The notes under the pieces were generated by a model. The model was not told the origin of the DNA and ran no database searches. It was given only the letters and a program-made list of their open reading frames with translations. A stretch of 33,267 nucleotides of DNA from Octopus bimaculoides (Eukaryota): NCBI RefSeq assembly GCF_001194135.2, contig NC_068998.1:37819104-37852370 (forward strand), read 5' to 3'. Positions 3,564 through 33,267 of the stretch are shown here, piece by piece. The position numbers and the translations under genes are program-made. Each line of letters opens with the position of its first letter. Positions within the stretch are counted from its first letter, which is position 1.

Positions 3564-4140
3564 CCACATGGTTCCGGGTTCAGCCCCACTGCGTGGCACT
3601 GTGGGCAGATGTTTTCTACAATAGCCTCGGGCCGACTAAAGACTTGTGAGCGGTTTGGGTAGACGGAAACTGAAAGAATATATATACAATTTTCTTTTTT
3701 GTTCCGCAGGGTGTCTATCAATCACCCTTCTCACCAAGCACACTTGTGGGGTTGCCAGTTTAGTCGGCGACGTCCCGACTATGTAACAGGTCGTATTGGA
3801 TTACATGGTACCAGTAGCGCTCAAGAGCGACCTAACATATTTGTATATGTGTGTGTATGTGTGCGTGTGTATGTGTGTGTGTGTGCGTGCACATGTGTGT
3901 GCGTGCACATGTGTGTGCGTGCACATGTGTGTGTGTGTCTTTGTGTCTGTGTTTGTTTCTCACCACCGCTTGAAAACCGGTGTCGGTGTATTTATGTCGG
4001 CAAAGAGAGCGATAGAATAAGTAACAGACTTTAAAAAGAATAAGTACCGGGGTCAATACATTCGACTAATACTTCTTCAAGGTGGTGCCCCAGCATGGCC
4101 ACAGTCTAATGAGTAAAAATGAATAAAAGATAAATGATAA
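3564..4140 (+). mobile_element. SINE family C, 5'-truncated and internally interrupted
   Basis: 3564-3680 matches the family C 5' half and about 3950-4140 the 3' half, separated by unique sequence and (TG)n. Confidence 0.7.
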
Positions 4141-4184: not shown

Positions 4185-4564
4185 CAATCAGTCATTCGAT
4201 AAATTAAAAAATAACTAGTTTTTTGGTAGGCTTTTATCATTATGCATAGGTAAATAAGGAATTGAATAAAAAGAGAATGATCAAAATAAGTGCTGGATTG
4301 AAAGAAGAAGCAATGTATGTTTAATGGTTTATGTTGGACACGAAACTTCATCAGTATTTCATTATTTTCCATGGTTTATTATAACGAAAGAGCCCGCTCA
4401 TTTTCGGTTTTATTGTGACTGTATTAACGCTACAATGTAAATGTATTATTGTAAATGTATTGAAAGTGTATTAACGGTGAAAAATCAGAAATCTGAACGA
4501 AAAGGTCATCCATGCTTAACCAACTTGCCTAAGTGATATTCTCAATATAAAAGCTACTTTATAA

Positions 4565-4786
4565 GGCGGCGAGTTGGCAGAATCGTTAGCACGCCAGGCA
4601 AAATTCTTAGCAGTATTTTTTCTGTCTTTAGGTTCTGAGATCAAATTCCACCGAGGTGGACTTCACTTTTAATCCTTTCGGAGTCGATGAAATAAGTACC
4701 AGCTGAGCACTGGGGTCTATGTAGTCGATTTAATTCGACCCCACGCACCATCTTGCTGGCCTTGTGCCACAAGTTGGAACCAATAC
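4565..4786 (+). mobile_element. tRNA-derived SINE, family B
   Basis: Head GGCGGCGAGTTGGCAGAATCGTTAGC, B-box-like GATCAAATTCC, core TTTAATCCTTTCGGAGTCGATGAAATAAGTACC and tail TTGCTGGCCTTGTGCC. About ten copies in the window. Confidence 0.8.
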
Positions 4787-5328: not shown

Positions 5329-6388
5329 GATATAGATATATGTATGTATGTATATACAGATATAGATGATATAGATATATATGCATGTATATATATATAT
5401 ATATATATATATANNNNNNNNNNNNNNNNNNNNNNNNNNNNNNNNNNNNNNNNNNNNNNNNNNNNNNNNNNNNNNNNNNNNNNNNNNNNNNNNNNNNNNN
5501 NNNNNNNNNNNNNNNNNNNNNNNNNNNNNNNNNNNNNNNNNNNNNNNNNNNNNNNNNNNNNNNNNNNNNNNNNNNNNNNNNNNNNNNNNNNNNNNNNNNN
5601 NNNNNNNNNNNNNNNNNNNNNNNNNNNNNNNNNNNNNNNNNNNNNNNNNNNNNNNNNNNNNNNNNNNNNNNNNNNNNNNNNNNNNNNNNNNNNNNNNNNN
5701 NNNNNNNNNNNNNNNNNNNNNNNNNNNNNNNNNNNNNNNNNNNNNNNNNNNNNNNNNNNNNNNNNNNNNNNNNNNNNNNNNNNNNNNNNNNNNNNNNNNN
5801 NNNNNNNNNNNNNNNNNNNNNNNNNNNNNNNNNNNNNNNNNNNNNNNNNNNNNNNNNNNNNNNNNNNNNNNNNNNNNNNNNNNNNNNNNNNNNNNNNNNN
5901 NNNNNNNNNNNNNNNNNNNNNNNNNNNNNNNNNNNNNNNNNNNNNNNNNNNNNNNNNNNNNNNNNNNNNNNNNNNNNNNNNNNNNNNNNNNNNNNNNNNN
6001 NNNNNNNNNNNNNNNNNNNNNNNNNNNNNNNNNNNNNNNNNNNNNNNNNNNNNNNNNNNNNNNNNNNNNNNNNNNNNNNNNNNNNNNNNNNNNNNNNNNN
6101 NNNNNNNNNNNNNNNNNNNNNNNNNNNNNNNNNNNNNNNNNNNNNNNNNNNNNNNNNNNNNNNNNNNNNNNNNNNNNNNNNNNNNNNNNNNNNNNNNNNN
6201 NNNNNNNNNNNNNNNNNNNNNNNNNNNNNNNNNNNNNNNNNNNNNNNNNNNNNNNNNNNNNNNNNNNNNNNNNNNNNNNNNNNNNNNNNNNNNNNNNNNN
6301 NNNNNNNNNNNNNNNNNNNNNNNNNNNNNNNNNNNNNNNNNNNNNNNNNNNNNNNNNNNNNNNNNNNNNNNNNNNNNNNNNNNNNNNN

Positions 6389-6721
6389 GCCAAGTAGATT
6401 GTGCAGAATATTCTCAAGTGTCTCATAGAGTATGTTAATAGCATTGGCTATTTGATCTATTGTCAATCGCCTGTCATCCGTCAGCATGTGGTGAACACGC
6501 TCAATGTTTTCCTCGGTGGTGGCAGTTGCAGGACGTGCAGACCTTGGGTCATTTTCAAGACTCTCTCTTTCCCTCCTAAATTCAGCCGCCCATTTTTGCA
6601 CTATTGTATAAGCTGGAGCGTCGTCCCCTAATGTAGCAACCATGTCATCATGAATGTTGCTGGGGGCTAAACCCTTTTTCTGCAGGTACTTGATAACAAG
6701 ACGATGCCAAATTTTGTCCAT
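6389..6721 (-). mobile_element. Mariner (Mos1/Hsmar-like) transposase N-terminal HTH region; remainder lost in the gap
   Basis: Uninterrupted 111 codons MDKIWHRLVIKYLQKKGLAPSNIHDDMVATLGDDAPAYTIVQKWAAEFRRERESLENDPRSARP...DDRRLTIDQIA... with the typical mariner W...F...LEDxPRSGRP and DRRxT motifs. Confidence 0.85.
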
Positions 6722-7057
6722 TTTCAAGAGAAGTCGCTACTAGTTACTTTTTAAGTGTTCTTTGAACAGTGAAATATCCTTAGTGAAATATCCGTTTACT
6801 TTGGTTTGATATCATTGTATCATACATTCCAATAGTGTATATGTGTAAGTATACATATGGCATACATGTAGGGAGAATGCTTGCAAGACATGCAACATCA
6901 ATGAAACTCGAACATCAATAACGGAAAATGTAAAGTAGAGCTATAAGATGAAATGAAATTATGTTAAAAGAACGGGCATTTATAAAGCAATGAAAAATTA
7001 CTACCGAAATACTGCAAATAAATTTTGATATATATGTGTGTGCATATACACACCCGC

Positions 7058-8544: not shown

Positions 8545-10270
8545 ACACAAATGTGCCCCTCCAGCTTTGTTTCCTGATAACTTCCGGAAAAATAGATATT
8601 TCTTAATGAAATTTTGTACACATATGCTTCAGTTGGTGTAGATTCCAGTTACATCTGAATTTTTTGTGAAAATTATTTTTTCGAGAGAGTGGAAAGAGGA
8701 ATTTCAGAAAACTTAGAAGAGTCAGCTTTGTATTCCTAATACCTTTCGGAAAATGAGTATTTTTAAATGAAAATTTAAATGAAAATTTAAATGAAAATTT
8801 CTACAAATGTCTTTCAGAGTATGTAAATGACGAATATATAAGAATTTGATGTGAAAAGCAAAATGGTGAGCACACACATATATATACACTGAGACATATA
8901 CCACCTTTTTTTTTTTTTTTTTTTCGAAATTCCAAGTTTTATTGTCTAGATATATTTGATGCACATCAGTATATATATGTGCTGCCCCGCCATTTTTTTT
9001 TTTTTTTGCATTTTAAATTCTGACATAATCGTAATCTACACTCTGAAAGGTATTTGTAAAAAAAGCTTCATAAAAAGTACCCATTTCTTTGATAGCCATG
9101 AGGAAACAAAGCTGACTCGCGTGAATTTTTCGAAAGTCCTTTCACTAACCGTGCAAAATTATTTTCCCTACTAATGGTTATATTATTTGGAATCTACACA
9201 AAGTCCAGTCATGAATGCTTCGCTCCGGCCGGTTATCGCATATCATTGCGCATGTGTTACCGGAAGCTTATAATGTTAAAGCAGTGGTTATACGTAAACA
9301 AATGTGCCCTGCCTACTTTGCTTCCTCATAACTTCAAGAAAACTGGATACTTTTTACTGAAATTTTCTGCAAATAAGCTCTAGGTGGTACAGGCTCCGAT
9401 TATACCTGCATTTGTTGTGGAAATAAAATGTTTTGGGGTAGTGGAGAGGGGAGTTTCAGAAAATTTACACAAGTCAGCTTTGTTTCCTCATAACTTTCGG
9501 AATAATGAGTATTTTTAAACTCTTACTCTCTCTTTTATTCTTTTACTTGTTTCAGTCATTTGACTGTGGCCATGCTGGAGCACCACCTTTAGTCGAGCAA
9601 ATCGACCCCAGGACTTATTCTTTGTATGCTTAGTACTTATTCTATCGGTTTCTTTTGCCGAACCGCTAGGTTACGGAGACGTAAACACACCAGCATCGGT
9701 TGTCAAGCGATGTTGGGGGGATAAACACAGACACAAACACACATACACACATATATATACATATACATATATATACGACGGGCTTCTTTCAGTTTCCGTC
9801 TACCAAATTCACTCACAAGGCTTTGGTCGGCCCGAGGCTATAGTAGAAGACACTTGCCCAAGGTGCCACGCAGTGGGACTGAACCCGGAACCATGTGGTT
9901 GGTAAGCAAGCTACTTACCACACAGCCACTCCTGTGCCTGGAAACTTTTGGCAAATACTTTTCAGAGTGTGTACACTACGAATATATTGGAATTTGATAT
10001 GGAAGTAAACATTGTGGAATAGCACACATACATACTGACAGACATCACCTTTTTGGCGGGTGTAGATTTATTTCACAACAAATTCCGATATAATGGGAAT
10101 CTACGTCATTTGGAGCGAATTTGGTGAAGATTCCATTAAAGAAATATCCATTTTTGTCAAAGATATGAGGAAAGAAATTCGTTTGGGCACATATGTGTAG
10201 GTATCCTGCAATTAACTCGAGACGCTTATTGTATATCATTGCACATGCGTTACCGGAAGTCCAGAGTACA
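8545..10270. repeat. Cluster of diverged direct and inverted copies of an AT-rich module (CAGCTTTGTTTCCTCATAAC subrepeat)
   Basis: 8545-8900 recurs directly at 9298-9520 plus 9940-10050. Inverted copies lie at about 8960-9170 and 10060-10190 (e.g. GAGTCAGCTTTG 8719-8730 vs CAAAGCTGACTC 9107-9118). Confidence 0.7.
9521..9938 (-). mobile_element. tRNA-derived SINE, family C, full length with internal (TA/TG)n
   Basis: Reverse complement: GGCACAGGAGTGGCTGTGTGGTAAG, B-box-like GGTTCAGTCCC, CACCTTGGGCAAG core and 3' CCAGCATGGCCACAGTCAAATGACTGAAACAAG. Inserted into the 8545-10270 repeat cluster. Confidence 0.85.
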
Positions 10271-11394
10271 CACGTATTTTTTAAAATTAATAATCGTGGA
10301 TATATATTTCGTGTTACGCTAAGAAGCGGTGTGCATGGTACCAGAAATTTCGGTACATGCATACATAGATACATGCATGCATACATACATACATACATAC
10401 ATACATACATACATACATACATACATGCAAGCATGCATACATGCATACATACATACATACATACATATATATATATATATTTGTACCTTTCGGTTGTAAA
10501 ATTGCGAATAAACCACCATTATATGTGTGTGTGTGTGTGTGTGTGTGTATGCATGTATATATATNNNNNNNNNNNNNNNNNNNNNNNNNNNNNNNNNNNN
10601 NNNNNNNNNNNNNNNNNNNNNNNNNNNNNNNNNNNNNNNNNNNNNNNNNNNNNNNNNNNNNNNNNNNNNNNNNNNNNNNNNNNNNNNNNNNNNNNNNNNN
10701 NNNNNNNNNNNNNNNNNNNNNNNNNNNNNNNNNNNNNNNNNNNNNNNNNNNNNNNNNNNNNNNNNNNNNNNNNNNNNNNNNNNNNNNNNNNNNNNNNNNN
10801 NNNNNNNNNNNNNNNNNNNNNNNNNNNNNNNNNNNNNNNNNNNNNNNNNNNNNNNNNNNNNNNNNNNNNNNNNNNNNNNNNNNNNNNNNNNNNNNNNNNN
10901 NNNNNNNNNNNNNNNNNNNNNNNNNNNNNNNNNNNNNNNNNNNNNNNNNNNNNNNNNNNNNNNNNNNNNNNNNNNNNNNNNNNNNNNNNNNNNNNNNNNA
11001 TAAAAATTTTGTGACTTCGCACTCAAATTAAAAATTTGTTTCTTTGTTCGAATGTTAGAGTTCAGTATTAGAAGTCTCTGGGCTTTTGATCTTTATCTTT
11101 AGAGTGTATGCTTACAATAGTTATATCTAATCTTCGTTTCGATCAATTCAGTGTCTGATTTTCATTATCTGTCTTATTCCTGGACATTAATACTCTGTAG
11201 GTTGGTGGATAAATTTTCAATTAGTTCAATAAAAATAAAGATAGAATTCATTTCAATTGGTTTGATAACGTTGGTATAGATATCGATATTTTTAACTTGC
11301 TTCAGTCATTGGGATGCAACCATGCTGAGGGCTGTGAAGATTTCAATCCAACAAATGCATAAGTGTGTGTGTATGTGTGTGTGTGTGTGTGTGT

Positions 11395-11580
11395 GTGTTT
11401 GTCTCACATCGCTATCCCTGTATTCAAGCAGCTCGGCAAAAAGAAACCGATAAAATACGTACCAGGCCTTAAAAAAAAAAAGCAATGAGTTACTAGAGTG
11501 ATTTGTTCCTCTAAAATGAAACGTTCAAGGTGGTGCTCCAGCACGGCCGCAGTCCAGAGAGTGAATCAAGTGAAAAATAA
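11395..11580 (+). mobile_element. SINE family C, 3' half
   Basis: CTCGGCAAAAAGAAACCGATAAAATACGTACC...GTGCTCCAGCACGGCCGCAGTC. Confidence 0.65.
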
Positions 11581-11986
11581 CGGGTATACTATGGAGAAAC
11601 AGAAAATTGACAAACATTTGTATCCATCGGAAACCACAAAATTAAGAATAAAACACTATACAGGATAATTAGCATCGTATGGACAAGAAAGCAGCAGCAA
11701 TAGCGCTCATACCGAACGCCATGCTAGAATAAAAACCTCATAAGTTGTGTAAAGGTGCTTTTGAAGTTTGTAAAATTGCTTTCATTGATGTGCAATTTGT
11801 GTTATAATGATAATTAGTGGGTGGTCCGAAGGAAATCGTTAGGGGTTTTCAAAAATATTCTTTTGTATCTTTTTTCCGCTTTTAATTTGATATATCCTTC
11901 GAACCTGTGACAGCCGTTAGGAAGGGAGATAACTGTAATATTGTTTTTTTATCATTGGTGTTACTGTATTGTTATTGTTAATTTCC

Positions 11987-12087
11987 CGCGCGCGCGCGCG
12001 CGTGTGTGTGTGTGTATGTATGTATGTATGTATGTATGTATGTATGTATGTGTGTATGTATGTATGTATGTATGTATGTATGTATGT
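11987..12087. repeat. Compound (CG)8-(TG)n-(TATG)n microsatellite
   Basis: Directly visible; uninterrupted purine-pyrimidine alternation. Confidence 0.95.
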
Positions 12088-12799
12088 AGAAAAATGTTAC
12101 ACGGCAGGACAACGAAGAAATAAACGGAGAAAGGAAATATACACAAAGGACGTGGGTACGTTCACCCCTCATCAGTTATCGACCAAAAGTCATCACAATT
12201 TCGACGTCTTATCGATATTGATTGGAGTATTTGCAAATGTTGAATGGTGGAAGTGTGAATGAATAGTTTGTAGTTTTTGTTCGTATATGTTGGAAAAAAA
12301 TCTTTGACAATCCATTACACAGATCGACTGTCATTCAACCCTTCACCATCCGGGTTTCTTTTTTTTTTCTGCCATATTATATTCGGGAATATTTAATAAC
12401 GTATAGCAATATCAAGATGGATGGACATGATTTGAAAGGGGATTCACTGCAATTTTGGCATAACGACCGACCATGTGCAGGTTCTAGCACGGCCAAATTT
12501 AATCTTCCTCTTCCTCCACGTTTTTTCTTTTTTTCTACTCCACTCCCTCCTCTTTCTCCCCTTTCTGCCGCATCCACTTCCTCCGCCCTATTTTCCTCAT
12601 CTCTCTTCTCTTTTTCATTCTCTTCTCGCTGTTCCTCAGGCCCCTTTTCTTTTCCTTCATTTTCCTCTACACTGTCCTCTACTCCATCATCCTCCTCTTC
12701 CTCATCATTCCCCCTTTTCCCCATCGCCCTCCTTCCCTTCCTGTCTTCGTATTCATCTCCTTCTCCCCCCGCCCCTGCTTCTTCGCCTTCGTGTCTTCT

Positions 12800-12935
12800 T
12801 GTTGCTGTTGTTGTTGGTTGCTGATATTTTCGCCCTAGGTCAACTCTGGATCAAAGTAACATGTTTGATCTTATTGCTGGTGAAGCTGGCCTATGATCAG
12901 AGGCGTTCCTGACACGTTGACCATCCCGTCGTTTT
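12800..12935 (-). mobile_element. Retroposon 3' end with (CAA)n tail, unclassified
   Basis: Reverse complement GACGGGATGGTCAACGTGTCAGGAACGCCTCTGATCATAGG... ending in (CAA)n. Confidence 0.4.
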
Positions 12936-13145
12936 TTGGAGGGTTTGTTTGATTTATTTTCAGACAGGTATGCATAGTGTATCTAAGAGTATATTATCTA
13001 ATGTGTCCTTCCGGTGTTTCTGTTACCCTTTTGATACCACCCCGACTGAAATCGCCCCTGGTTTTATGATACAGACTCCTTCATTTAAAGCGATTTAAAT
13101 TAAATCCTTTCATTAATATTTCATGTTAATTTACGTTCAGAATTC

Positions 13146-13262
13146 GGCGGCGAGCTAGCATAACCGCTAGCAAACCAGGGGAAAAGGCTTAACGGCATTG
13201 TGTCAGTCTCTACATTTTGATTTCAAATTCCACCAAGATCAACTTTGCCTTTCATCCTTTCG
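13146..13262 (+). mobile_element. SINE family B, 5' portion
   Basis: GGCGGCGAGCTAGCATAACCGCTAGC...TTCAAATTCCACC...GCCTTTCATCCTTT. Confidence 0.7.
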
Positions 13263-13387
13263 TCAAAATTTGAAATACCGGCTTAATAAAGATAAAATTA
13301 TGTTAAATTATGAATTTTTTTTCTTTCCAGAAAATAATTTAAACAAAGACAGTATATTTCAACAGTGATATTATAACAAAAGGCTTC

Positions 13388-13758
13388 AGAAATACAGAAG
13401 TGGGAATCGGATTAATATTCCCGAACCCGAACTCGGAGAGTGCCCGTCCAACGGCGGGAACGTGGCGTGCTCCTAGCAGCACATCTGTCGTCGAAGCCGG
13501 CGGCCGGGCGAAGCAGCGGCAAAGCAAGCGAGCCAGGAGACGTTGCCGGGAGCCCCGGGAAGAGTTCTCTCTTCTTCGTAAAGAACCGCGTCCGTGGAAT
13601 CGGCTCGTTCGGAGATACGGATATGGTGCCTGTAGAGCGCCGCGTCTCGGGCGGCGTCCGGTGCGCTCTCGACGGCCCTGGAAAATCCGGGTCCGTAACT
13701 AAAGCCCTCTGTGTGTAACCCCTTGTGGGCAGTAAAGAAATAAGAAACACTCAAGTGG
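13388..13758 (+). mobile_element. Candidate 28S-derived retroposon: rRNA body, 48-nt non-rRNA tail and putative TSD
   Basis: Tail AAAGCCCTCTGTGTGTAACCCCTTGTGGGCAGTAAAGAAATAAGAAAC (13701-13748) ends in a short AAGAAAT-like repeat. Flanking direct repeats AGAAATACAGAAGTGG (13388-13403) and AGAAACACTCAAGTGG (13743-13758) are 13/16 identical. Confidence 0.55.
13398..13700 (+). rRNA. Dispersed 28S rRNA-derived fragment (D7 region, 5' part of 28S-beta); not a functional rRNA gene
   Basis: Conserved LSU blocks: GGGAATCGGATTAATATTCCCGAACC, GGGAGCCCCGGGAAGAGTTCTCTCTTCTT, GGCGGCGTCCGGTGCGCTCTCGACGGCCCTGGAAAATCCGGG, then TCCGTAACT (a block normally about 110 nt further 3'). Sharp GC-rich island in AT-rich DNA, with no other rDNA nearby. 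Confidence 0.9.
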
Positions 13759-14717
13759 TTGTTGCACAAGATATTGTTTTAAATTTAAGTCAATTTTTGG
13801 TTAAGCAAGATGTGATATGAAGGAAATCCCGTTGCTATTTCTAGCGGGTCGGGCGACTATTTAGAGAAAAAAATCATCGTTGGTTTGCTTGCATGCTTTT
13901 GCGTTTCGAGGTAAGTAACACTTATAGAGCACCAACACTGATCTCCCCAAAACACCTCAGATCCTTAGTTTTTATCTGTTTGTTTCTTTATCATTTTTCT
14001 TTTACTTTTTGCGATAGAGATTTTTATGTGTGGGTGGCTCTCTGTATGCTGTAGCATTCTCGCGCTTATGTTGGCCTATTTGCAATGTGAACTAAGGCAG
14101 CAAGACGTTGCTAGTGCTTTTCGGATTCCAGTTCTAAAATTTAGATGAATTGGTAATTTTCATTTCCTTTTTTTCACTTTTTGGAGAAAGGGGGATTTTC
14201 TTTGTAATTTCTATTTTTATTGGTATTTTTTTCTCCTTATATTTCCTAATTTCACCGGTAAATCAAACACGAGACGTTCCAAAATAACCTACATCCTCTT
14301 TTATGACAACTATTCTGAATATTGACTGGTTCTTGATAACCAAATATTGGTTTTCTTTTATGTAAGACGCGCGCGCACATACACACAAGCACACACACAT
14401 ATGCACACACACAAACACACACACGTGCGTGCACACACAAACATGCGCACCTATATGCATATATATACATAGACACGTGTACACAAAAAACTCAGTCAAG
14501 AACGCACGTACACACACACACACACATGCACACACAGACACACACATACACACACACACACACACACATGCACACACAGACACACACATACACACACACG
14601 CACACAAGTCGTGACGACATTCTTTCATCTACACCGCTCGACTCTACAGAAACGGATCAAAAGATTTTGTCAACCCATTCCATAATTGTCTTCTGTATTT
14701 TTTATTTTTTTATTTTG

Positions 14718-14791
14718 CTTTTCTTCTTCTTCTTCTGCTTCTTCTTCTTCTTCCTCTTCTTCTTCTTCTTCTTCTGCTTCTTCTTCTTCTG

Positions 14792-14822
<31 letters not shown>

Positions 14823-14905
14823 TTCTTCTTCTTCCTTCCTTCCTTCCTTCCTTCCGCCTTCTACCTTATCCATCCACCTTCGCTTTAGTTTTCTTCTCTT
14901 CTTCC
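14718..14905. repeat. (TTC)n/(TTCC)n polypyrimidine tract
   Basis: Directly visible; explains the poly-S and poly-E ORFs. Confidence 0.95.
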
Positions 14906-15336
14906 TTCCGTCCACCCCTCCCTGCTCTCTATACCTTGTGAGATTTTGTATGTATTTTTTTTTTTGCATTTTTTTATTTTTAAATTTTTATTTTTTTCTG
15001 TTTGCGGCCCGTAAGACTTGCAAACACAATATTTATCCCAGGGCATTACACTATGGCAAACAAATATTTCTGACATGGCTCTGTGAAGGTGAACTGCAGG
15101 ATTATCGAAATTCTTGCCAGCCCGTGGCGGTTTACTTCTCTAAATACTGAAAAGCTAGTCAACTCTGGTTCTGCTTAAAATTCAAGGGACGGGGTGTAAA
15201 ATAACCAACTGAAGAAGCAGTGTTTATACTCAGAGTACACGGCGAGTAAAGATAGACTTAGAGCATGGGAGAGGGGGAGCTTTGGCTATTAGTGGTTTTA
15301 TTTAACATACTACTACTGTTGTTATTACGATTAATG

Positions 15337-15526
15337 ATGGCTTCACATTTTTGCACACGTCCATCAGTTTCATGGACCCCAGTATTCATCTGCTACTTAT
15401 TTTATCGAGACCGAAAGAATGAAAAACAAAGTCGACCTAGGCGGAATTTGATCCCAGAACGTAAAGACGAACGTAATGTCGCTAAGCATTTTTCCCGGAG
15501 TGCTAACAATTCTGCCACCTCACCGA
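15337..15526 (-). mobile_element. SINE family B
   Basis: Reverse complement matches the 4565-4786 head and core. Confidence 0.75.
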
Positions 15527-15538
15527 CTTTGTTACGAC

Positions 15539-15604
<66 letters not shown>

Positions 15605-15626
15605 TGATGATTTCAANNNNNNNNNN

Positions 15627-15662: not shown

Positions 15663-15874
15663 GATTTCAAATTCTAACACAAGGCAAGCCATTTCAGAGT
15701 AAGGAGTTAATTCGATTACATCGACCCCAGTACTCAACTGGTACTTATTTTATCAACCACGAGAGGAAGACAAGCAAAGAGACTTAGACGGAATGTGAAC
15801 TCAGAATGTAAAGACGGACTAAATGCCGCTATGCATTATGTCCGGCATGATAACGGTTCTGCCAGTTCGCCGCC
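15663..15874 (-). mobile_element. SINE family B
   Basis: Reverse complement begins GGCGGCGAACTGGCAGAACCGTTATC; core and tail present. Confidence 0.8.
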
Positions 15875-15892
15875 TTAAAAATGATAATCCTT

Positions 15893-16101
15893 TCTGCTGT
15901 AGGCACAGAACCTGAAATTTTTTGGGACGGGGTCTAATCGATTACTTCTACCCCAGTACATGACTGGTATTTATTTCATCGACTCCGAAAGGATGAAAGA
16001 CAAAGTCGACCTCAGCAGCATTTGAACTCAGAAAATATATCCGGAACAAAAATTACTAAGCATTTTGTCCGGCGTGATAACGATTCCACCAGCTTGCCTG
16101 C
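15893..16101 (-). mobile_element. SINE family B (variant tail)
   Basis: Head and core match the other copies. Confidence 0.75.
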
Positions 16102-16198
16102 TGACACGGTTACTCATGCTACACTTTGGGCAAAGGAGGGAGAGAGCTATGACTAATAATGTTTCAGTTTATTTTATTTCTGTTATTACTACTGTGAA

Positions 16199-16586
16199 GG
16201 CGCAATGGCCTAATGGTTAGCGCAGCGGACTCGCGGTCATAGGATCGCGGTTTCGATGTCCAAACCGGGCGTTGTGAGTGTTTATTGAGCGAAAGCACCT
16301 AAAAGCTCCACGAGGCTCCGGCAGGGGATGGTGGCGAACCCTGCTGTACTCTTTCACCACAACTTTCTCTCACTCTTACTTCCTGTTTCTGTTGTGCCTG
16401 TAATTCAAAGGGTCAGCCTTGTCACACTGTGTCACGCTGAATATCCCCGAGAACTACGTTAAGGGCACACGTGTCTGTGGAGTGCTCAGCCACTTGCACG
16501 TCACTTTCACGAGCAGGCTGTTCTGTTGATCGGATCAACTCGAACCCTCGACGTCGTAAACGACGGAGTGCCAACAAAAACAAAAC
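16199..16586 (+). mobile_element. tRNA-derived SINE, family A (Arg-like head), full length
   Basis: A box TGGCCTAATGG, B box GGTTTCGATGTCC and a CAA-rich tail. Closely similar copies at 17687-18062 and 21471-21805. Confidence 0.85.
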
Positions 16587-17686: not shown

Positions 17687-18062
17687 GGCATTCCGTCGCT
17701 TATGACGTCGAGGGTTCCAGTTGATCCGATCAACGGAACAGCCTGCTCGTGAAATTAACGTGCAAGTGGCTGAGCACTCCACAGACACGTGTACCCTTAA
17801 CATAGTTCTCGGGGATATTCAGCCTGACACAGTGTGACAAGGCTGGCCCTTCTAATTACAGGCACAACAGAAACAGGAAGTAAGAGTGAGAGAAAGTTGT
17901 GGTGAAAGAGTACAGCAGGGTTTACCACCATCCCCTGCCGGAGCCTCGTGGAGTTTTAGGTGTTTTCGCTCAATAAACACTCACAACGCCCGGTCTGGGA
18001 ATCGAAACCGCGATGCTATGATCGCGAGTCCGCTGCCCTAACCACTGGGCCATTGTGTCTCC
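17687..18062 (-). mobile_element. SINE family A copy
   Basis: Reverse complement aligns with 16199-16570 along its length. Confidence 0.85.
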
Positions 18063-18610
18063 ACCATGATATATACTTCTTGACCATTTAACTTTCCAAA
18101 GTATTCTCATAAATTTATCCTAAACGTCCATGCTTGTTTACAGACTTTTAGGTAGGCCTTGTTTAATACGTTCTGAGTAATACGAAGCTTACCACTAGTT
18201 AATATGGCGGCTGAAAAAATTGGTAATGTATATGATATATGATGCATGGACGCCAGTGAAATATGTCCGGTATATCACATGTGATACACAGGACAGGCAA
18301 ATGGTTAACCTATTTCTATATCAGATTCCTGGTGTTGTTTATAAACACACTATATTGTTACTTAGCATAAGGCATTTATATCATTACTAGCAGCAATATC
18401 CGCCCTTGTCCGCATTTATTAATACCTAAATTAATAAACAGACTCAATTGAATACAGGATATTTTGTATAAATTGCTTTTAAAATATGCTAACAATCTCG
18501 AGTCTTTTAGAAAAAAATTACAAACTTCTTGGTTCACTCAAACCTGCTGCAATTAGACAATTCGGGGAATTGGTTCAAATTTCATCTCAATGATTATTCA
18601 CAACAAAAAA

Positions 18611-19395: not shown

Positions 19396-19703
19396 GGCCG
19401 ACCAAAGCCTTTTGAGTGGATTTGGTAGACGGAAACTGAAAGAAGTCCGTCGTATATATGTATATACATATGTATGTGTGTGTGTCTGTGTGTGTGTATG
19501 TTTGTGTGTCTGTGTTTGTCCCCCCTAGCATTGCTTGACAACCGATGCTGGTGTGTTTGCGTCCTCGTAACTTAGCGGCTCGGCAAAAGAGACCGATAGA
19601 ATAAGTACTAGGCTTACAAAGAATAAGCTCTTGGGTCGATTTGCTCGACTATAAAGGCGGTGCTCCAGCATGGCCGCAGTCAAACGACTGAAACAAGTAA
19701 AAG
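19396..19703 (+). mobile_element. SINE family C (5' end in gap)
   Basis: Aligns to the reverse complement of 9530-9835. Confidence 0.85.
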
Positions 19704-19714
19704 ACTATACATAT

Positions 19715-21470: not shown

Positions 21471-21805
21471 GTTGTTGGCACTCCGTCGCTTACGACCTCG
21501 AGGGTTCCAGTTGATCCGATCAACGGAACAGCCTGCTTGTGAAATTAACGTGCAAGGGGCTGAGCACTCCACAGGCACGTGTACCCTTAACGTAGTTCTC
21601 GAGGATATTCAGCGTGACACAGTGTGACAAGGCTGACCCTTTGAATTACAGGCACAACAGAAACAGGAAGTAAGAGTGAGAGAAAGTTGTGGTGAAAGAG
21701 TACAGCAGGGTTCGCCACCATCCCCTGCCGGAGCTTTAGGTGTTTTCGCTCAATAAACACTCACAACGCCCGGTCTGGGAATCGAAACTGCGATCCTATG
21801 ACCGC
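21471..21805 (-). mobile_element. SINE family A copy (5' end in gap)
   Basis: Reverse complement aligns with 16240-16575. Confidence 0.85.
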
Positions 21806-22679
21806 NNNNNNNNNNNNNNNNNNNNNNNNNNNNNNNNNNNNNNNNNNNNNNNNNNNNNNNNNNNNNNNNNNNNNNNNNNNNNNNNNNNNNNNNNNNNNNN
21901 NNNNNNNNNNNNNNNNNNNNNNNNNNNNNNNNNNNNNNNNNNNNNNNNNNNNNNNNNNNNNNNNNNNNNNNNNNNNNNNNNNNNNNNNNNNNNNNNNNNN
22001 NNNNNNNNNNNNNNNNNNNNNNNNNNNNNNNNNNNNNNNNNNNNNNNNNNNNNNNNNNNNNNNNNNNNNNNNNNNNNNNNNNNNNNNNNNNNNNNNNNNN
22101 NNNNNNNNNNNNNNNNNNNNNNNNNNNNNNNNNNNNNNNNNNNNNNNNNNNNNNNNNNNNNNNNNNNNNNNNNNNNNNNNNNNNNNNNNNNNNNNNNNNN
22201 NNNNNNNNNNNNNNNNNNNNNNNNNNNNNNNNNNNNNNNNNNNNNNNNNNNNNNNNNNNNNNNNNNNNNNNNNNNNNNNNNNNNNNNNNNNNNNNNNNNN
22301 NNNNNNNNNNNNNNNNNNNNNNNNNNNNNNNNNNNNNNNNNNNNNNNNNNNNNNNNNNNNNNNNNNNNNNNNNNNNNNNNNNNNNNNNNNNNNNNNNNNN
22401 NNNNNNNNNNNNNNNNNNNNNNNNNNNNNNNNNNNNNNNNNNNNNNNNNNNNNNNNNNNNNNNNNNNNNNNNNNNNNNNNNNNNNNNNNNNNNNNNNNNN
22501 NNNNNNNNNNNNNNNNNNNNNNNNNNNNNNNNNNNNNNNNNNNNNNNNNNNNNNNNNNNNNNNNNNNNNNNNNNNNNNNNNNNNNNNNNNNNNNNNNNNN
22601 NNNNNNNNNNNNNNNNNNNNNNNNNNNNNNNNNNNNNNNNNNNNNNNNNNNNNNNNNNNNNNNNNNNNNNNNNNNNNNN

Positions 22680-22791: not shown

Positions 22792-23002
22792 CTTTCAAAT
22801 TTTGGCACAAGGCTAGCAATTTTGGAGTAATGGATAATCGATTACATCAAGCCCCAATGTTCAACTGGTATTTATTTTATCGAATCCCGAAAGAATGAAA
22901 GGCAAAGTTGATCCCAGCAGCCTTTGAATTCTAAACGTAAAGTCGGAAGATTTGCCGATAAACACTTTGTCCGGCACGGTAGCAATTCTGCCAGCTAGCC
23001 GC
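22792..23002 (-). mobile_element. SINE family B
   Basis: Head, core and tail recognisable in the reverse complement. Confidence 0.8.
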
Positions 23003-23519: not shown

Positions 23520-23720
23520 TTGGTTTCAAATTTTAGCACATGACCAACAATTTCGAGGGATTACATCGACCCTAGTATTCAACTGGTACTTATTTTATCG
23601 GCTCCGAAATGAGGAAAGGCAAAGTCAACCTGGGCGGAATTTGAACTTAGACCGTGAAAACGGACGCAATGCTGCTAAGCATTTTGCCCGGCGTGCTAAC
23701 GATTCTGCCAGCTCACCGCC
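23520..23720 (-). mobile_element. SINE family B
   Basis: Reverse complement begins GGCGGTGAGCTGGCAGAATCGTTAGCACGCCGGGC. Confidence 0.85.
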
Positions 23721-23996
23721 TTACGAAAGAAATATATTGACATTAATTGTGACCGAATGCTATAGATCTGAGATGCAAATGTGATCTAAGCTATATTAAG
23801 ATTGGAGACAAAATGAATTATTTTGTCAAAAACTACTAACGTCCAAAAATTAAAAACAAAATATCTTAAAACGAAGACATACAAGTTTTAAAATTAACAT
23901 TATTACACAAGGAGGAAAAATATATGAAAAATCTTGAGTTTGTTGGAAAAAATTGATGGAAGACCGAAATAATTATCTGAGGAAACGTACAATATT

Positions 23997-24197
23997 GATT
24001 TCAAAATTTTTGTATAAAGCCAGCATTTCCGGGTTGGGACAGTAAGTCGATTACATCGACCCCAGCACTCTACTGGTACTTATTTTATTGGTCTCAAAGG
24101 GATGAAAGGCAATGTCAGCCTAGACGGACTTTGAGCTCGGACGAAATGTTGCTAAGCATTTCACTCGGCGTGCTAACGATTCTGCCAGCTCACCGCC
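23997..24197 (-). mobile_element. SINE family B
   Basis: Reverse complement begins GGCGGTGAGCTGGCAGAATCGTTAGCACGCCGAG. Confidence 0.8.
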
Positions 24198-29019: not shown

Positions 29020-29050
<31 letters not shown>

Positions 29051-29804
29051 CATATATACGACAGGCTTCTTTCAGTTTCCGTCTTCCAAATCCACTCACA
29101 AGGTTTTGGTCGGTCCGAGGCCATAGTAGAAGCCCAAGGTGCAACGCAGTGAGACTTAACCCAGAACCTTCCTGATAGATTAATATGATGTTCCTCCATA
29201 TGCGGGAACGCTAGTAGCAATTGTGATGATTAATAGAGCCATTTAATTTCAACGCAGTTTCATCACTCCAAATAGTCTTAGAAAATCTTCTGCCCACCTT
29301 GCTACGTACCACTCTCAAAACTCCCCTCTTCGTTCCAGTTCATCTTCATTGAGAGATGGAGTATTGTTGAAAAGTAACTTTTTTCCCTACGAGAGCGCTT
29401 CAAAATGCGACGGGCGCTTGATTTTGAAATTCCTAACTCACAGCTCGGTTTGGCATACAAATTTATTTGAACTCTTCTAAAACCATTTCTTGCTTTGTGA
29501 GTTTCGTCTACCTCTGCGGCCTTCCGAAACGTTTCTTGTCGAAATTATGAACAATTCCAACGGCTTTAAACTTATACCTAATTCGATTGATGGTGAGTTG
29601 CATTGTGGATCTGATTGGAACTCCGACACAAACTTTGCACTTCGACTGCGTTTTCAAGCTTCCATTCGCACTTGAGGAATACATTTCTTGTTCAAAGATT
29701 AGACTGTCTGCATTTATTATTTCAAATGAATTAAATCTACAAACAAGTGAAAATTAACTGAGCTATCAGATGTTAAAGTATGGATACATTTTGGGGACAC
29801 ATTA
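28083..29804 (-). mobile_element. Decayed Tc1/mariner element, DD41D-like, with DUF4817-type HTH; interrupted by a SINE and a gap
   Basis: Frameshifted translation gives KCEWKLENAVEV..., IWSDETALKLNGSINHHNC (about 29220-29275), FYFQQDG (about 28510-28527), DLTLLD (about 28388-28405) and VDELRAAIERECAQIP. There are 121 nt between the second and third catalytic Asp codons (about 40-41 codons). Degenerate TIRs share CCCCAAAA (28089-28096; reverse complement at 29789-29796). Confidence 0.8.
29057..29165 (-). mobile_element. SINE family C fragment nested in the DD41D-like transposon
   Basis: ACGACAGGCTTCTTTCAGTTTCCGTC...CCCAAGGTGCAACGCAGTG matches 9775-9885. Confidence 0.75.
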
Positions 29805-31365: not shown

Positions 31366-31512
31366 ACTGTGCGGTAAGTAGCTTGCTTACCAAACACATG
31401 GTTCCGGGTTTAGTCCCACTACGTGGCACCTTGGGCAAGTATCTTCTACTATGACCTCGAGCCGACCAAAGCCCTGTGAGTGGATTTGATAGACGGAAAC
31501 TGAAAGAAACCT
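31366..31512 (+). mobile_element. SINE family C, 5' half
   Basis: GGTAAGTAGCTTGCTTACCAAACACATGGTTCCGGG...GACGGAAACTGAAAG. Confidence 0.8.
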
Positions 31513-32462
31513 GCTGTGTGTGTGTGTGTGTTTGTGTGTATATAAGCTCATGTTTTCATGTATATGTATAAATGCATNNNNNNNNNNNNNNNNNNNNNNN
31601 NNNNNNNNNNNNNNNNNNNNNNNNNNNNNNNNNNNNNNNNNNNNNNNNNNNNNNNNNNNNNNNNNNNNNNNNNNNNNNNNNNNNNNNNNNNNNNNNNNNN
31701 NNNNNNNNNNNNNNNNNNNNNNNNNNNNNNNNNNNNNNNNNNNNNNNNNNNNNNNNNNNNNNNNNNNNNNNNNNNNNNNNNNNNNNNNNNNNNNNNNNNN
31801 NNNNNNNNNNNNNNNNNNNNNNNNNNNNNNNNNNNNNNNNNNNNNNNNNNNNNNNNNNNNNNNNNNNNNNNNNNNNNNNNNNNNNNNNNNNNNNNNNNNN
31901 NNNNNNNNNNNNNNNNNNNNNNNNNNNNNNNNNNNNNNNNNNNNNNNNNNNNNNNNNNNNNNNNNNNNNNNNNNNNNNNNNNNNNNNNNNNNNNNNNNNN
32001 NNNNNNNNNNNNNNNNNNNNNNNNNNNNNNNNNNNNNNNNNNNNNNNNNNNNNNNNNNNNNNNNNNNNNNNNNNNNNNNNNNNNNNNNNNNNNNNNNNNN
32101 NNNNNNNNNNNNNNNNNNNNNNNNNNNNNNNNNNNNNNNNNNNNNNNNNNNNNNNNNNNNNNNNNNNNNNNNNNNNNNNNNNNNNNNNNNNNNNNNNNNN
32201 NNNNNNNNNNNNNNNNNNNNNNNNNNNNNNNNNNNNNNNNNNNNNNNNNNNNNNNNNNNNNNNNNNNNNNNNNNNNNNNNNNNNNNNNNNNNNNNNNNNN
32301 NNNNNNNNNNNNNNNNNNNNNNNNNNNNNNNNNNNNNNNNNNNNNNNNNNNNNNNNNNNNNNNNNNNNNNNNNNNNNNNNNNNNNNNNNNNNNNNNNNNN
32401 NNNNNNNNNNNNNNNNNNNNNNNNNNNNNNNNNNNNNNNNNNNNNNNNNNNNNNNNNNNNNN

Positions 32463-32496
<34 letters not shown>

Positions 32497-33102
32497 GCAG
32501 TCAGGGACAGAAAGATATTTATTCATTCTATCTATATGTTAATAAATATTCATGAATATTTCTACAGCAATCAAAAAGAGCTATCAACCGAAAGATACCG
32601 TTTAAAACCTTTCTGAATTTCATTTCAGCTTCGGTGCTATCAGAGGCACCCATGCTCGTTTCAGTCACATATGATACACATATATGTGTGTGTGTCTCTG
32701 AATGCGTATTTGGATCTGTATGTGTCTGTATGTTTGTGTGTGTGTGTGAGCGAGTAATTATCCAGAATCGAATCAATCATCACGTGATATAGATTGGAAA
32801 TAAGATGTACGAGAAATATAATCTAAAACACCCTTAGGTTATAATCAAGTAAATATATATTAATTCTATGAGTGGTTATGAATGGGTAGGATAATTAATT
32901 CATATTCTCTTTTATGTCTAATGTTTGTATATATTTAAAATGTGTTTATTATATAAATAATATATCCACACATCCGGAACACATTTACGTACATAAGTAT
33001 GTGTGTGTGTGTGTTTGTGCGAGCGCGCTTGCCTGTGTATGCAGGTATATACACATATATGCACACATACATACATACATACATACATACATACTGTGTT
33101 AT

Positions 33103-33228
33103 AAGAAGTTTGCTTCCCAACCACATGGTTCCGGGTTCAGTCCCACTACTTGGCATCTTTGGGATAATCTCGAGTCGACCAAAGCTTTGTGAGTGGATTT
33201 GGTAGACAGAAACTGAAAGAAGCCCGCT
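33103..33228 (+). mobile_element. SINE family C, 5' half
   Basis: AAGAAGTTTGCTTCCCAACCACATGGTTCCGGGTTCAGTCCC...GAAACTGAAAGAAGCCCG. Confidence 0.8.
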
Positions 33229-33267
33229 CTGTGTGTGTGTGTGTATGTATATATAAATATATATATA

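What the first reader, a model, noticed from the sequence alone, without database searches (positions are those of the whole stretch)
13388..13758. Candidate 28S rRNA-derived SINE or chimeric retrocopy starting at the protostome hidden-break position
Seen: a roughly 300-nt 28S segment isolated from any rDNA unit. It is fused to a 48-nt non-rRNA tail ending in AAAGAAATAAGAAAC and bracketed by a 13/16 direct repeat. After GAAAATCCGGG it jumps to TCCGTAACT, which in 28S (GGATCCGTAACTTCGGG) lies about 110 nt downstream, implying an internal deletion at an AAATC-GG-like microhomology. Known: protostome 28S is cleaved in D7a, and the beta fragment begins near the conserved CGAAAGGGAATC block. LINE template switching makes cellular-RNA chimeras (U6/L1). 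A 28S-derived SINE (SINE28) is known in mammals, from a different part of the molecule. Inference: reverse transcription began on a LINE/SINE 3' tail, switched to mature 28S-beta RNA and ran off its natural 5' end. If the same deletion and tail recur genome-wide, this is an amplifying 28S-headed SINE family, which I do not know to be described in cephalopods. It would also record the break site in DNA.
Basis: partly seen in the sequence, partly recalled or inferred. Interest (0 to 1): 0.8.

Follow-up and report, generated by a model that had tools for sequence, protein, structure and literature searches.

The report
28S rRNA–SINE-tail chimeric retrocopy
A 298-base piece of 28S ribosomal RNA was reverse-transcribed into an octopus-like genome fused to the last 38 bases of a common SINE, a decaying one-off by-product of LINE activity of a kind already described in mammals.

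Summary
Window 13402-13699 is a genuine 28S fragment (Rfam LSU 104.8 bits, E 1e-25; 88% identical to Argonauta hians 28S positions 2122-2404). It is the only rDNA-like piece in the window.

- **Tail:** 13705-13742 matches, 35/38, the last 38 nt of an abundant 235-nt SINE in Octopus sinensis. That SINE always ends ...GTAAAGAAATA, exactly where the downstream direct repeat begins.
- **Target-site duplication:** the composite is bracketed by a 16-bp repeat, 13/16 matching (empirical p about 0.01-0.02). Full copies of the same SINE carry 10-12 bp duplications.
- **Mechanism:** one LINE-driven insertion that began on the SINE 3' end and continued on 28S rRNA. Template switching or RNA ligation is inferred.
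- **Decay:** six of 221 otherwise invariant 28S positions are mutated, all GC to AT. No Pol III box pair was found.

The 5' end lies 5 nt inside the conserved block after D7a, about 30 nt past the predicted break loop, so it does not prove the 28S-beta end. Whether sibling copies exist could not be tested genome-wide; none appeared in 115 kb of Octopus DNA. New member of a known kind; modest interest.

The parts
13388..13403 (+). Upstream copy of the target-site duplication, AGAAATACAGAAGTGG. Its last two G overlap the first two bases of the 28S part.
   Evidence: 13/16 match to 13743-13758 (empirical p about 0.01-0.02). Copies of the same SINE in O. sinensis have 10-12 bp duplications whose targets also start (A)GAA.
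13402..13699 (+). 28S rRNA-derived segment in sense orientation. It runs from GGGAATCGG, just 3' of expansion D7a, through D7b to GGGTCCGTAAC, and corresponds to Argonauta hians 28S 2122-2404.
   Evidence: Rfam LSU_rRNA_eukarya 104.8 bits, E 1.2e-25. blastn 263/298 to Argonauta 28S; 188/196 outside D7b. Multiple alignment with four native 28S sequences. 6 of 221 invariant columns changed, all GC to AT.
13700..13704 (+). Junction filler TAAAG of unresolved origin. It could be untemplated bases, a host-specific 28S loop sequence, or a SINE variant.
   Evidence: Matches neither the Argonauta 28S continuation (GATTCG...) nor the SINE copies (..TTGTC).
13705..13742 (+). 3'-terminal 38 nt of an abundant 235-nt Octopus SINE: CCCTCTGTGTGTAACCCCTTGTGGGCAGTAAAGAAATA.
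   Evidence: 35/38 identical to L010 24890-24927 (O. sinensis), SINE positions 198-235 of 235, E 5e-10. Seven copies of this 3' module in 115 kb of Octopus DNA; five end ...AAAGAAATA before unrelated flanks.
13743..13758 (+). Downstream copy of the target-site duplication, AGAAACACTCAAGTGG.
   Evidence: Begins exactly after the natural SINE 3' terminus; 13/16 to 13388-13403.
13183..13262 (+). Older, partial copy of the same SINE body in the left flank (SINE positions 38-117). It belongs to the context, not to the insertion.
   Evidence: blastn 80% over 80 nt to the O. sinensis SINE; matches other window copies.

Best explanation
This is a dead, chimeric processed pseudogene made in a single target-primed reverse transcription event by a LINE that normally mobilises an abundant Octopus SINE.

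Proposed sequence of events:
1. The endonuclease nicked a target beginning AGAAA.
2. Reverse transcription started at the natural 3' end of a SINE RNA (...GUAAAGAAAUA) and copied its last 38 nt.
3. The enzyme then continued on 28S rRNA, either by template switching or because the two RNAs had been ligated. It entered at about position 2404 (Argonauta numbering) and copied 298 nt up to GGGAAUC, just 3' of expansion segment D7a.
4. The cDNA end was joined to the target with a 2-nt GG overlap, leaving a 16-bp target-site duplication.

The copy has no promoter of its own that I could detect and has since decayed.

Shown: the composite structure, the identity of both parts, the natural SINE terminus, the flanking repeat and the decay.

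Inferred: the order of events, template switching versus RNA ligation, and that it is a single copy.
For: 28S part:
- (104.8 bits, E 1e-25).
- 88% to Argonauta 28S 2122-2404; 95.9% outside D7b.

Tail:
- It equals SINE positions 198-235 of 235, 35/38 identical.
- Seven copies of this module occur in 115 kb of Octopus DNA. Five end at ...AAAGAAATA followed by different flanks.

Target-site duplication:
- A full SINE copy has a perfect 12-bp duplication and a dimeric copy has a 10-bp one starting AGAAAG. The family therefore inserts with duplications of this size at AGAA-like targets.
- The window's repeat brackets the whole composite and starts exactly after the SINE terminus.

Real, old DNA rather than rDNA reads:
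- 6 of 221 invariant 28S columns are changed, all GC to AT.
- GC is 63% inside and 35% in the flanks.

Precedent:
- The human genome holds tailed LSU fragments with target-site duplications (PMC4994717).
Against: - The duplication has 3 mismatches in 16. Its first 7 nt (AGAAATA) equal the SINE's last 7 nt, so part of the repeat could reflect tail-like sequence rather than duplication. Without those bases only AC..AAGTGG (8/10) remains.
- The 5-nt filler is unexplained.
- Only 38 nt of SINE were copied before the switch, which needs either a broken SINE RNA or an internal switch.
- The partner LINE was not identified.
- The host's own 28S and an empty orthologous site were not available.
Confidence: 0.75

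Rival explanations
1. It is one member of an amplifying SINE (sub)family whose head is this 28S segment and whose tail is borrowed from the tRNA-type Octopus SINE.
For: - It carries the LINE-recognised 3' end of a very successful SINE.
- SINE families of this genome are modular. A dimeric form with the same internal junction occurs at two O. sinensis loci.
Against: - No A box plus B box pair on the sense strand.
- The 28S piece is internal to a Pol I transcript.
- No sibling ORFs were found in 5.8 billion proteins, using frames that span the tail and junction.
- No second copy in the window or in 115 kb of Octopus DNA. This only bounds the copy number at roughly under 60,000.
Confidence: 0.1
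2. DNA-level origin: an rDNA fragment (orphon) was captured at a double-strand break or moved by ectopic recombination next to a pre-existing 5'-truncated SINE. The flanking repeat is chance.
For: - Dispersed rDNA-like fragments without retroposition hallmarks are common in other genomes: 76 of 109 human LSU fragments have no adjacent simple or low-complexity repeat tail (PMC4994717).
- The repeat is imperfect and A-rich.
Against: - The 28S piece abuts, within 5 nt, a SINE fragment that ends at its natural 3' terminus.
- The repeat brackets both parts together and begins exactly at that terminus. An independent insertion landing exactly there is unlikely.
- No spacer or other rDNA parts are present.
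Confidence: 0.1
3. Assembly artefact: rDNA reads were wrongly joined into a draft scaffold.
For: The window is a draft scaffold with 13 N gaps and many microsatellites.
Against: - The element and 2 kb or more on each side lie in one gap-free contig.
- The 28S part carries six GC-to-AT changes at positions invariant in four native 28S sequences.
- It is joined to a SINE end and bracketed by a repeat.
Confidence: 0.03

Closest known systems
[quoted passage not shown]
   Same: - A 28S fragment of a few hundred nt (median 269; here 298) in sense orientation.
- It is fused 5' of the 3' end of a retroelement and flanked by one target-site duplication.
- It is explained by template switching or RNA ligation during target-primed reverse transcription.
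   Different: - The 3' partner here is a SINE end (38 nt), not LINE-1.
- The host is an octopod.
- The 28S region differs: D7a/D7b here against a recurrent start near 3636 in human.
- The partner LINE is unknown.
U6/L1 and other chimeric retrogenes (Buzdin et al. 2003, as cited in PMC4758252; my own knowledge for details)
   Same: Bipartite structure: a cellular non-coding RNA at the 5' side, a retroelement 3' end at the 3' side, and a single duplication.
   Different: U6 is usually copied full length from its natural ends. Here the 28S part is an internal fragment with neither natural end shown.
SINE28 and tailed LSU retropseudogenes of mammals (Longo et al. 2015, PMC4994717)
   Same: An LSU-derived fragment with an A-rich 3' end, a duplication and an endonuclease-like target.
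   Different: - SINE28 derives from the last ~500 nt of 28S, has a plain A-rich tail, is multi-copy and is transcribed by Pol III.
- Here the piece is from the middle of 28S and carries a SINE-derived tail.
- Copy number and transcription are unknown here.
[quoted passage not shown] 2006, as cited in PMC4824008)
   Same: The same proposed founding event: a SINE 3' part joined to an rRNA-derived 5' part.
   Different: 5S rRNA brings its own internal Pol III promoter. This 28S fragment shows none, so propagation is not expected.
Octopus tRNA-derived SINEs OK, OR1, OR2 (Ohshima and Okada 1994, cited in PMC4824008 and PMC4758252)
   Same: The tail donor is an abundant short interspersed repeat of Octopus with 10-12 bp duplications.
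   Different: I could not check whether the donor is one of these named families. Rfam and ARAGORN find no tRNA in it.

Membership tests
LINE-mediated chimeric retrocopy (cellular RNA + retroelement 3' end) | 5' part is a cellular RNA copy in the same orientation as the 3' part | tested here: met
   28S sense strand at 13402-13699; SINE end in sense at 13705-13742.
LINE-mediated chimeric retrocopy (cellular RNA + retroelement 3' end) | 3' part is a 5'-truncated retroelement that ends at its natural 3' terminus | tested here: met
   Matches SINE positions 198-235 of 235. Five of the seven Octopus copies of this 3' module end at the same ...AAAGAAATA.
LINE-mediated chimeric retrocopy (cellular RNA + retroelement 3' end) | One target-site duplication flanks the whole composite | tested here: met
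   13/16 repeat at 13388-13403 and 13743-13758, empirical p 0.01-0.02. Caveat: the first 7 nt resemble the SINE tail.
LINE-mediated chimeric retrocopy (cellular RNA + retroelement 3' end) | Single insertion event shown by an empty orthologous site | not testable with these tools
   No DNA search of cephalopod genomes is available. Only 115 kb of Octopus DNA could be fetched through protein look-ups.
SINE family (28S-headed) | Many copies with the same internal structure and different flanks | tested here: inconclusive
   None in the window, in 115 kb of Octopus DNA or among ORFs of public collections. This bounds the copy number only weakly.
SINE family (28S-headed) | Internal Pol III promoter (A and B boxes) or shown transcription | tested here: not met
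   No A+B box pair on the sense strand. The only hit is a 2-mismatch A-like match inside the flanking repeat. Transcription is not testable.
SINE family (28S-headed) | 3' tail shared with a LINE or an active SINE | tested here: met
SINE28 (Longo et al. 2015) | [quoted passage not shown] | tested here: not met
   The fragment is Argonauta 28S 2122-2404 of 4601.
Copy of mature 28S-beta starting at the protostome hidden break | 5' end coincides with the mapped 5' terminus of 28S-beta | tested here: inconclusive
   - The break lies between two conserved 20-mers, in the middle of the region (PMC6925239).
- The copy starts 5 nt inside the downstream marker.
- It lacks 22 nt conserved in all four natives and is about 29-31 nt past the predicted AU-rich loop of Argonauta D7a.
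- No RNA-end data exist for the host.
Functional rDNA or orphon rDNA unit | Contiguity with other rDNA parts and intact conserved positions | tested here: not met
   Only 298 nt are present, with no other rDNA in the window. Six changes at invariant sites.

The most novel reading that the evidence does not exclude
The chimera may not be a one-off. It could be one of a class of octopod retrocopies in which the SINE/LINE reverse transcriptase repeatedly switches onto fragments of the naturally broken 28S rRNA. Their 5' ends would then cluster at rRNA break sites: the protostome D7a gap and the octopus-specific H88 break reported in PMC13321053. If so, the genome keeps a DNA record of rRNA fragment ends, or even a young 28S-headed SINE lineage. 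My evidence does not exclude this. The copy ends within a few tens of nt of the predicted D7a break, and no genome-wide count was possible.
Probability: 0.1. Interest if true: 0.55.

Novelty: new member of a known kind. Interest (0 to 1): 0.3.

Why it matters
It is a clean, fully dissected example outside mammals of a reverse transcriptase joining two unrelated RNAs, a SINE end and ribosomal RNA, in one insertion.

- It shows that the LINE machinery behind the most abundant Octopus SINE also captures cellular RNAs.
- This is the event proposed to found rRNA-headed SINEs.
- It gives a concrete way to ask whether retrocopy ends record the break sites of cephalopod 28S rRNA.

On its own it is a decaying pseudogene with no sign of function.

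Tried and rejected
- **Rfam at gathering threshold over the whole window:** missed the fragment. The local E-value scan found it. The part of that alignment upstream of 13396 is filler.
- **Tail 44-mer and low-stringency blastn in the window:** only chance hits. A weak resemblance to the SINE motif AATAAGTACCAGT was considered and dropped.
- **The repeat finder on the whole window:** swamped by N runs and microsatellites.
- **Protein searches with ORFs across the tail and all other frames:** only native rDNA-type ORFs were found, from Argonauta, a decapodiform and marine metagenomes. No siblings.
- **Exact look-ups of window ORFs:** not on record, so the source assembly cannot be reached.
- **DNA pattern scans of JGI metagenomes and GTDB genomes:** nothing.
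- **Tail against the whole Argonauta rDNA unit:** chance level, with 97 of 200 shuffles as good. The tail is therefore not rDNA, ETS or ITS of that relative.
- **Tail folding:** no structure (z = 0.1).
- **Extension of 28S homology into 13700-13742 (as the MAFFT alignment suggested):** rejected. It is about 35-40% identical, and the stretch is explained by the SINE.
- **Host identification with the mariner ORF:** ambiguous (60-76% identity). However, other repeats are 88-91% identical to O. sinensis loci, and the 28S piece is closest to an octopod.
- **tRNA origin of the donor SINE:** not supported by ARAGORN or Rfam.
- **Cluster members of the Argonauta protein:** all from Argonauta, so no Octopus 28S was obtained.

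Full report
**What is in the sequence**

The window is a draft eukaryotic scaffold with 13 runs of N and many microsatellites. The region of the finding lies in a gap-free stretch from 11000 to 15616.

A local Rfam scan finds eukaryotic LSU rRNA at 104.8 bits, E 1.2e-25. The whole-window scan at gathering thresholds had missed it. The real similarity begins at GGGAATCGGATTAATATTCCCGAACC. The part of the cmscan alignment upstream of about 13396 is AT-rich filler.

**Getting native 28S for comparison**

No tool searches cephalopod DNA directly. I therefore translated reading frames across the fragment and searched the protein collections for spurious ORFs called on rDNA.

- The antisense ORF that spans tail and fragment (13412-13750, minus strand) hit only one protein, on a marine-metagenome 28S contig.
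- A concatenation of the other five frames hit nine proteins. The best was a 'hypothetical protein' of Argonauta hians.
- The contig of that protein (L005) is a true rDNA unit, with 18S, 5.8S and a 4601-nt 28S.
- A Logan RNA-seq contig (L006) shares exact peptide stretches with an Acanthosepion pharaonis rDNA-derived protein. It therefore gives a decapodiform 28S.

**The 28S part**

- Window 13402-13699 aligns with Argonauta 28S 2122-2404 at 263/298.
- The differences are concentrated in the D7b expansion. Outside it the identity is 188/196.
- A blastn of the whole Argonauta rDNA unit against the window finds nothing else, so the piece is isolated.
- At 221 columns invariant in four native 28S sequences, the window differs at six. 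All six are G or C changed to A or T.
- GC content is 63% inside and 35% in the flanks.

This is decayed genomic DNA, not misassembled rDNA reads.

Native Argonauta reads GGAAAATTCGGGTCCGTTACGATTCGCAGC. The decapodiform reads GGAAAATCCGGGTCCGGTTTTCGCAGC. The window's GGAAAATCCGGGTCCGTAAC is simply colinear with 28S up to 13699. No jump to GGATCCGTAACTTCGGG is needed. Beyond 13699 the window diverges from all natives.

**The tail**

Initial tests gave nothing.

- The tail is unique in the window.
- It has no notable fold.
- It does not match the Argonauta rDNA unit above chance.
- It is absent from the metagenome and prokaryote collections.

The answer came from Octopus genomic DNA, fetched through homologues of a mariner ORF that lies elsewhere in the window.

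- Window 13705-13742 is 35/38 identical to L010 24890-24927 of O. sinensis (E 5e-10).
- That stretch is the last 38 nt of a complete 235-nt SINE copy. The body of this SINE occurs about eight times in the window itself, including a partial copy at 13183-13262.
- The same 3' module occurs seven times in 115 kb of Octopus DNA. Five of those copies end at ...GTAAAGAAATA and are followed by unrelated sequence.
- One full copy has a perfect 12-bp target-site duplication (GAATCGAAACCA). A dimeric copy has a 10-bp one (AGAAAGTAGA).

**The flanking repeat**

AGAAATACAGAAGTGG (13388-13403) and AGAAACACTCAAGTGG (13743-13758) match at 13/16. In equally wide search zones, this is reached at 2.2% of random places in the window and in 0.9% of shuffles.

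Two independent facts strengthen it.

- The downstream copy begins exactly one base after the natural SINE terminus.
- The target starts with AGAA, like the targets of the Octopus copies.

The caveat is that the first 7 nt (AGAAATA) equal the SINE's last 7 nt. This fits priming by annealing of the nicked target to the RNA end, but it also means that part of the similarity is not independent.

**Anatomy**

| Part | Coordinates |
|---|---|
| Target-site duplication, left copy | 13388-13403 |
| 28S segment (GG shared with the duplication) | 13402-13699 |
| Unexplained bases TAAAG | 13700-13704 |
| SINE 3' end | 13705-13742 |
| Target-site duplication, right copy | 13743-13758 |

**Mechanism**

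The simplest account is one target-primed reverse transcription event. It was primed on the SINE RNA 3' end. After 38 nt the enzyme continued on 28S rRNA, either by template switching or because the two RNA fragments had been ligated. The cDNA was then joined to the target at a 2-nt overlap.

The composite structure and its boundaries are shown. The order of steps and the joining mechanism are inferred.

Two separate insertions are unlikely, because the repeat brackets both parts together.

**The hidden break**

According to Natsidis et al. (PMC6925239), the protostome break lies between two conserved 20-mers. It sits at the tip of a stem in the middle of that region, which is about 105 nt long in molluscs.

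In Argonauta the two markers are at 1967 and 2117. The AU-rich tip of the predicted D7a hairpin is at about 2064-2093.

The copy starts at 2122-2124, which is 5-7 nt inside the downstream marker.

- It lacks the 22 nt GGCCGGCCTYSCRTCGAAA that all four native sequences share just upstream.
- Its start is therefore about 29-31 nt past the likely break, not at it, unless the octopod 28S-beta begins at GGGAAUC. Only RNA-end mapping can show that.
- The GG overlap at the 5' junction is what microhomology-mediated joining of a truncated cDNA would leave.

The proximity is suggestive, since a broken template would limit the copy to about this length. It is not proof. A recent preprint reports a second, octopus-specific break in helix 88 (PMC13321053), which is far from this fragment.

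**SINE family or one-off?**

- No A box plus B box pair is present.
- No sibling ORFs exist in the protein collections.
- No second copy occurs in the window or in 115 kb of Octopus DNA.

The last result only bounds the copy number at some tens of thousands. The question stays open, but nothing favours a family.

**Comparison with what is known**

- The human genome holds 109 dispersed LSU fragments. Thirty-three have simple-repeat tails, and many have target-site duplications (PMC4994717).
- SINE28 proper comes from the 28S 3' end and is transcribed by Pol III. This element does not meet that definition.

The present element is thus a new, well-resolved member of a known kind, in an octopod, with a SINE rather than a LINE as the 3' partner.

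**Host**

- The 28S piece is closest to an octopod: Argonauta 88.9% against a decapodiform 83.6%.
- Other repeats in the window are 88-91% identical to O. sinensis loci.
- The species itself was not identified.

Noticed in passing
window 4564-4734(+), 13183-13262(+), 15372-15517(-), 15701-15875(-), 15938-16098(-), 22838-23002(-), 23559-23721(-), 24043-24141(-): About eight copies of the body of one SINE (AGGCGGCGAGCTGGCAGAATCGTTAGCACGCCGG...), roughly 235 nt when complete. The 3' modules differ between copies. It looks tRNA-like by eye, but ARAGORN and Rfam find no tRNA.
   Followed up: partly
L010 24693-25046 and L012 30585-30237(-) (O. sinensis): A dimeric form of that SINE at two separate loci: a full copy followed at once by a second copy starting at position 49, with the same internal junction (AAATA|RGTATTTCGTC). 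In L012 it is flanked by one 10-bp duplication. This suggests either a propagating dimer or recurrent template switching.
   Followed up: partly
window 6389-6727(-), continuing into the N gap 5414-6388: N-terminal 113 aa of a mariner/Mos1-type transposase. Its homologues carry PF17906 and PF13565. The best matches are 60-76% identical and include O. sinensis and O. bimaculoides proteins.
   Followed up: partly
window 16192-16571(+), 17688-18076(-), 21478-21805(-): Three copies of a repeat of about 390 bp, 89-91% identical to O. sinensis L010 22032-24424 region 22032-22424. Each is next to an N gap or a low-complexity tract.
   Followed up: no
window 9530-9939, 19401-19704, 29020-29168, 31367-31539, 33094-33267: Another interspersed repeat family shared with O. 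sinensis and O. bimaculoides loci at 75-92% identity, usually adjoining TG/CA microsatellites.
   Followed up: no
window 13402-13699 (tool behaviour): The whole-window cmscan at gathering thresholds reported no match, although the fragment scores 104.8 bits against a gathering score of 50 when only 1.2 kb is scanned. Short rRNA fragments can be lost by the speed filters.
   Followed up: yes
L005 (Argonauta hians BAAFZT010000267.1) and the Acanthosepion pharaonis protein P0010: Public cephalopod annotations contain 'hypothetical proteins' that are spurious ORFs on the antisense strand of 28S rDNA.
   Followed up: yes
window 13880-13915: An open stretch ending ...GCTTTTGCGTTTCGAG|GTAAGTAAC looks like an exon end with a consensus splice donor, about 150 nt downstream of the insertion. 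Whether the element sits in or near a gene was not examined.
   Followed up: no
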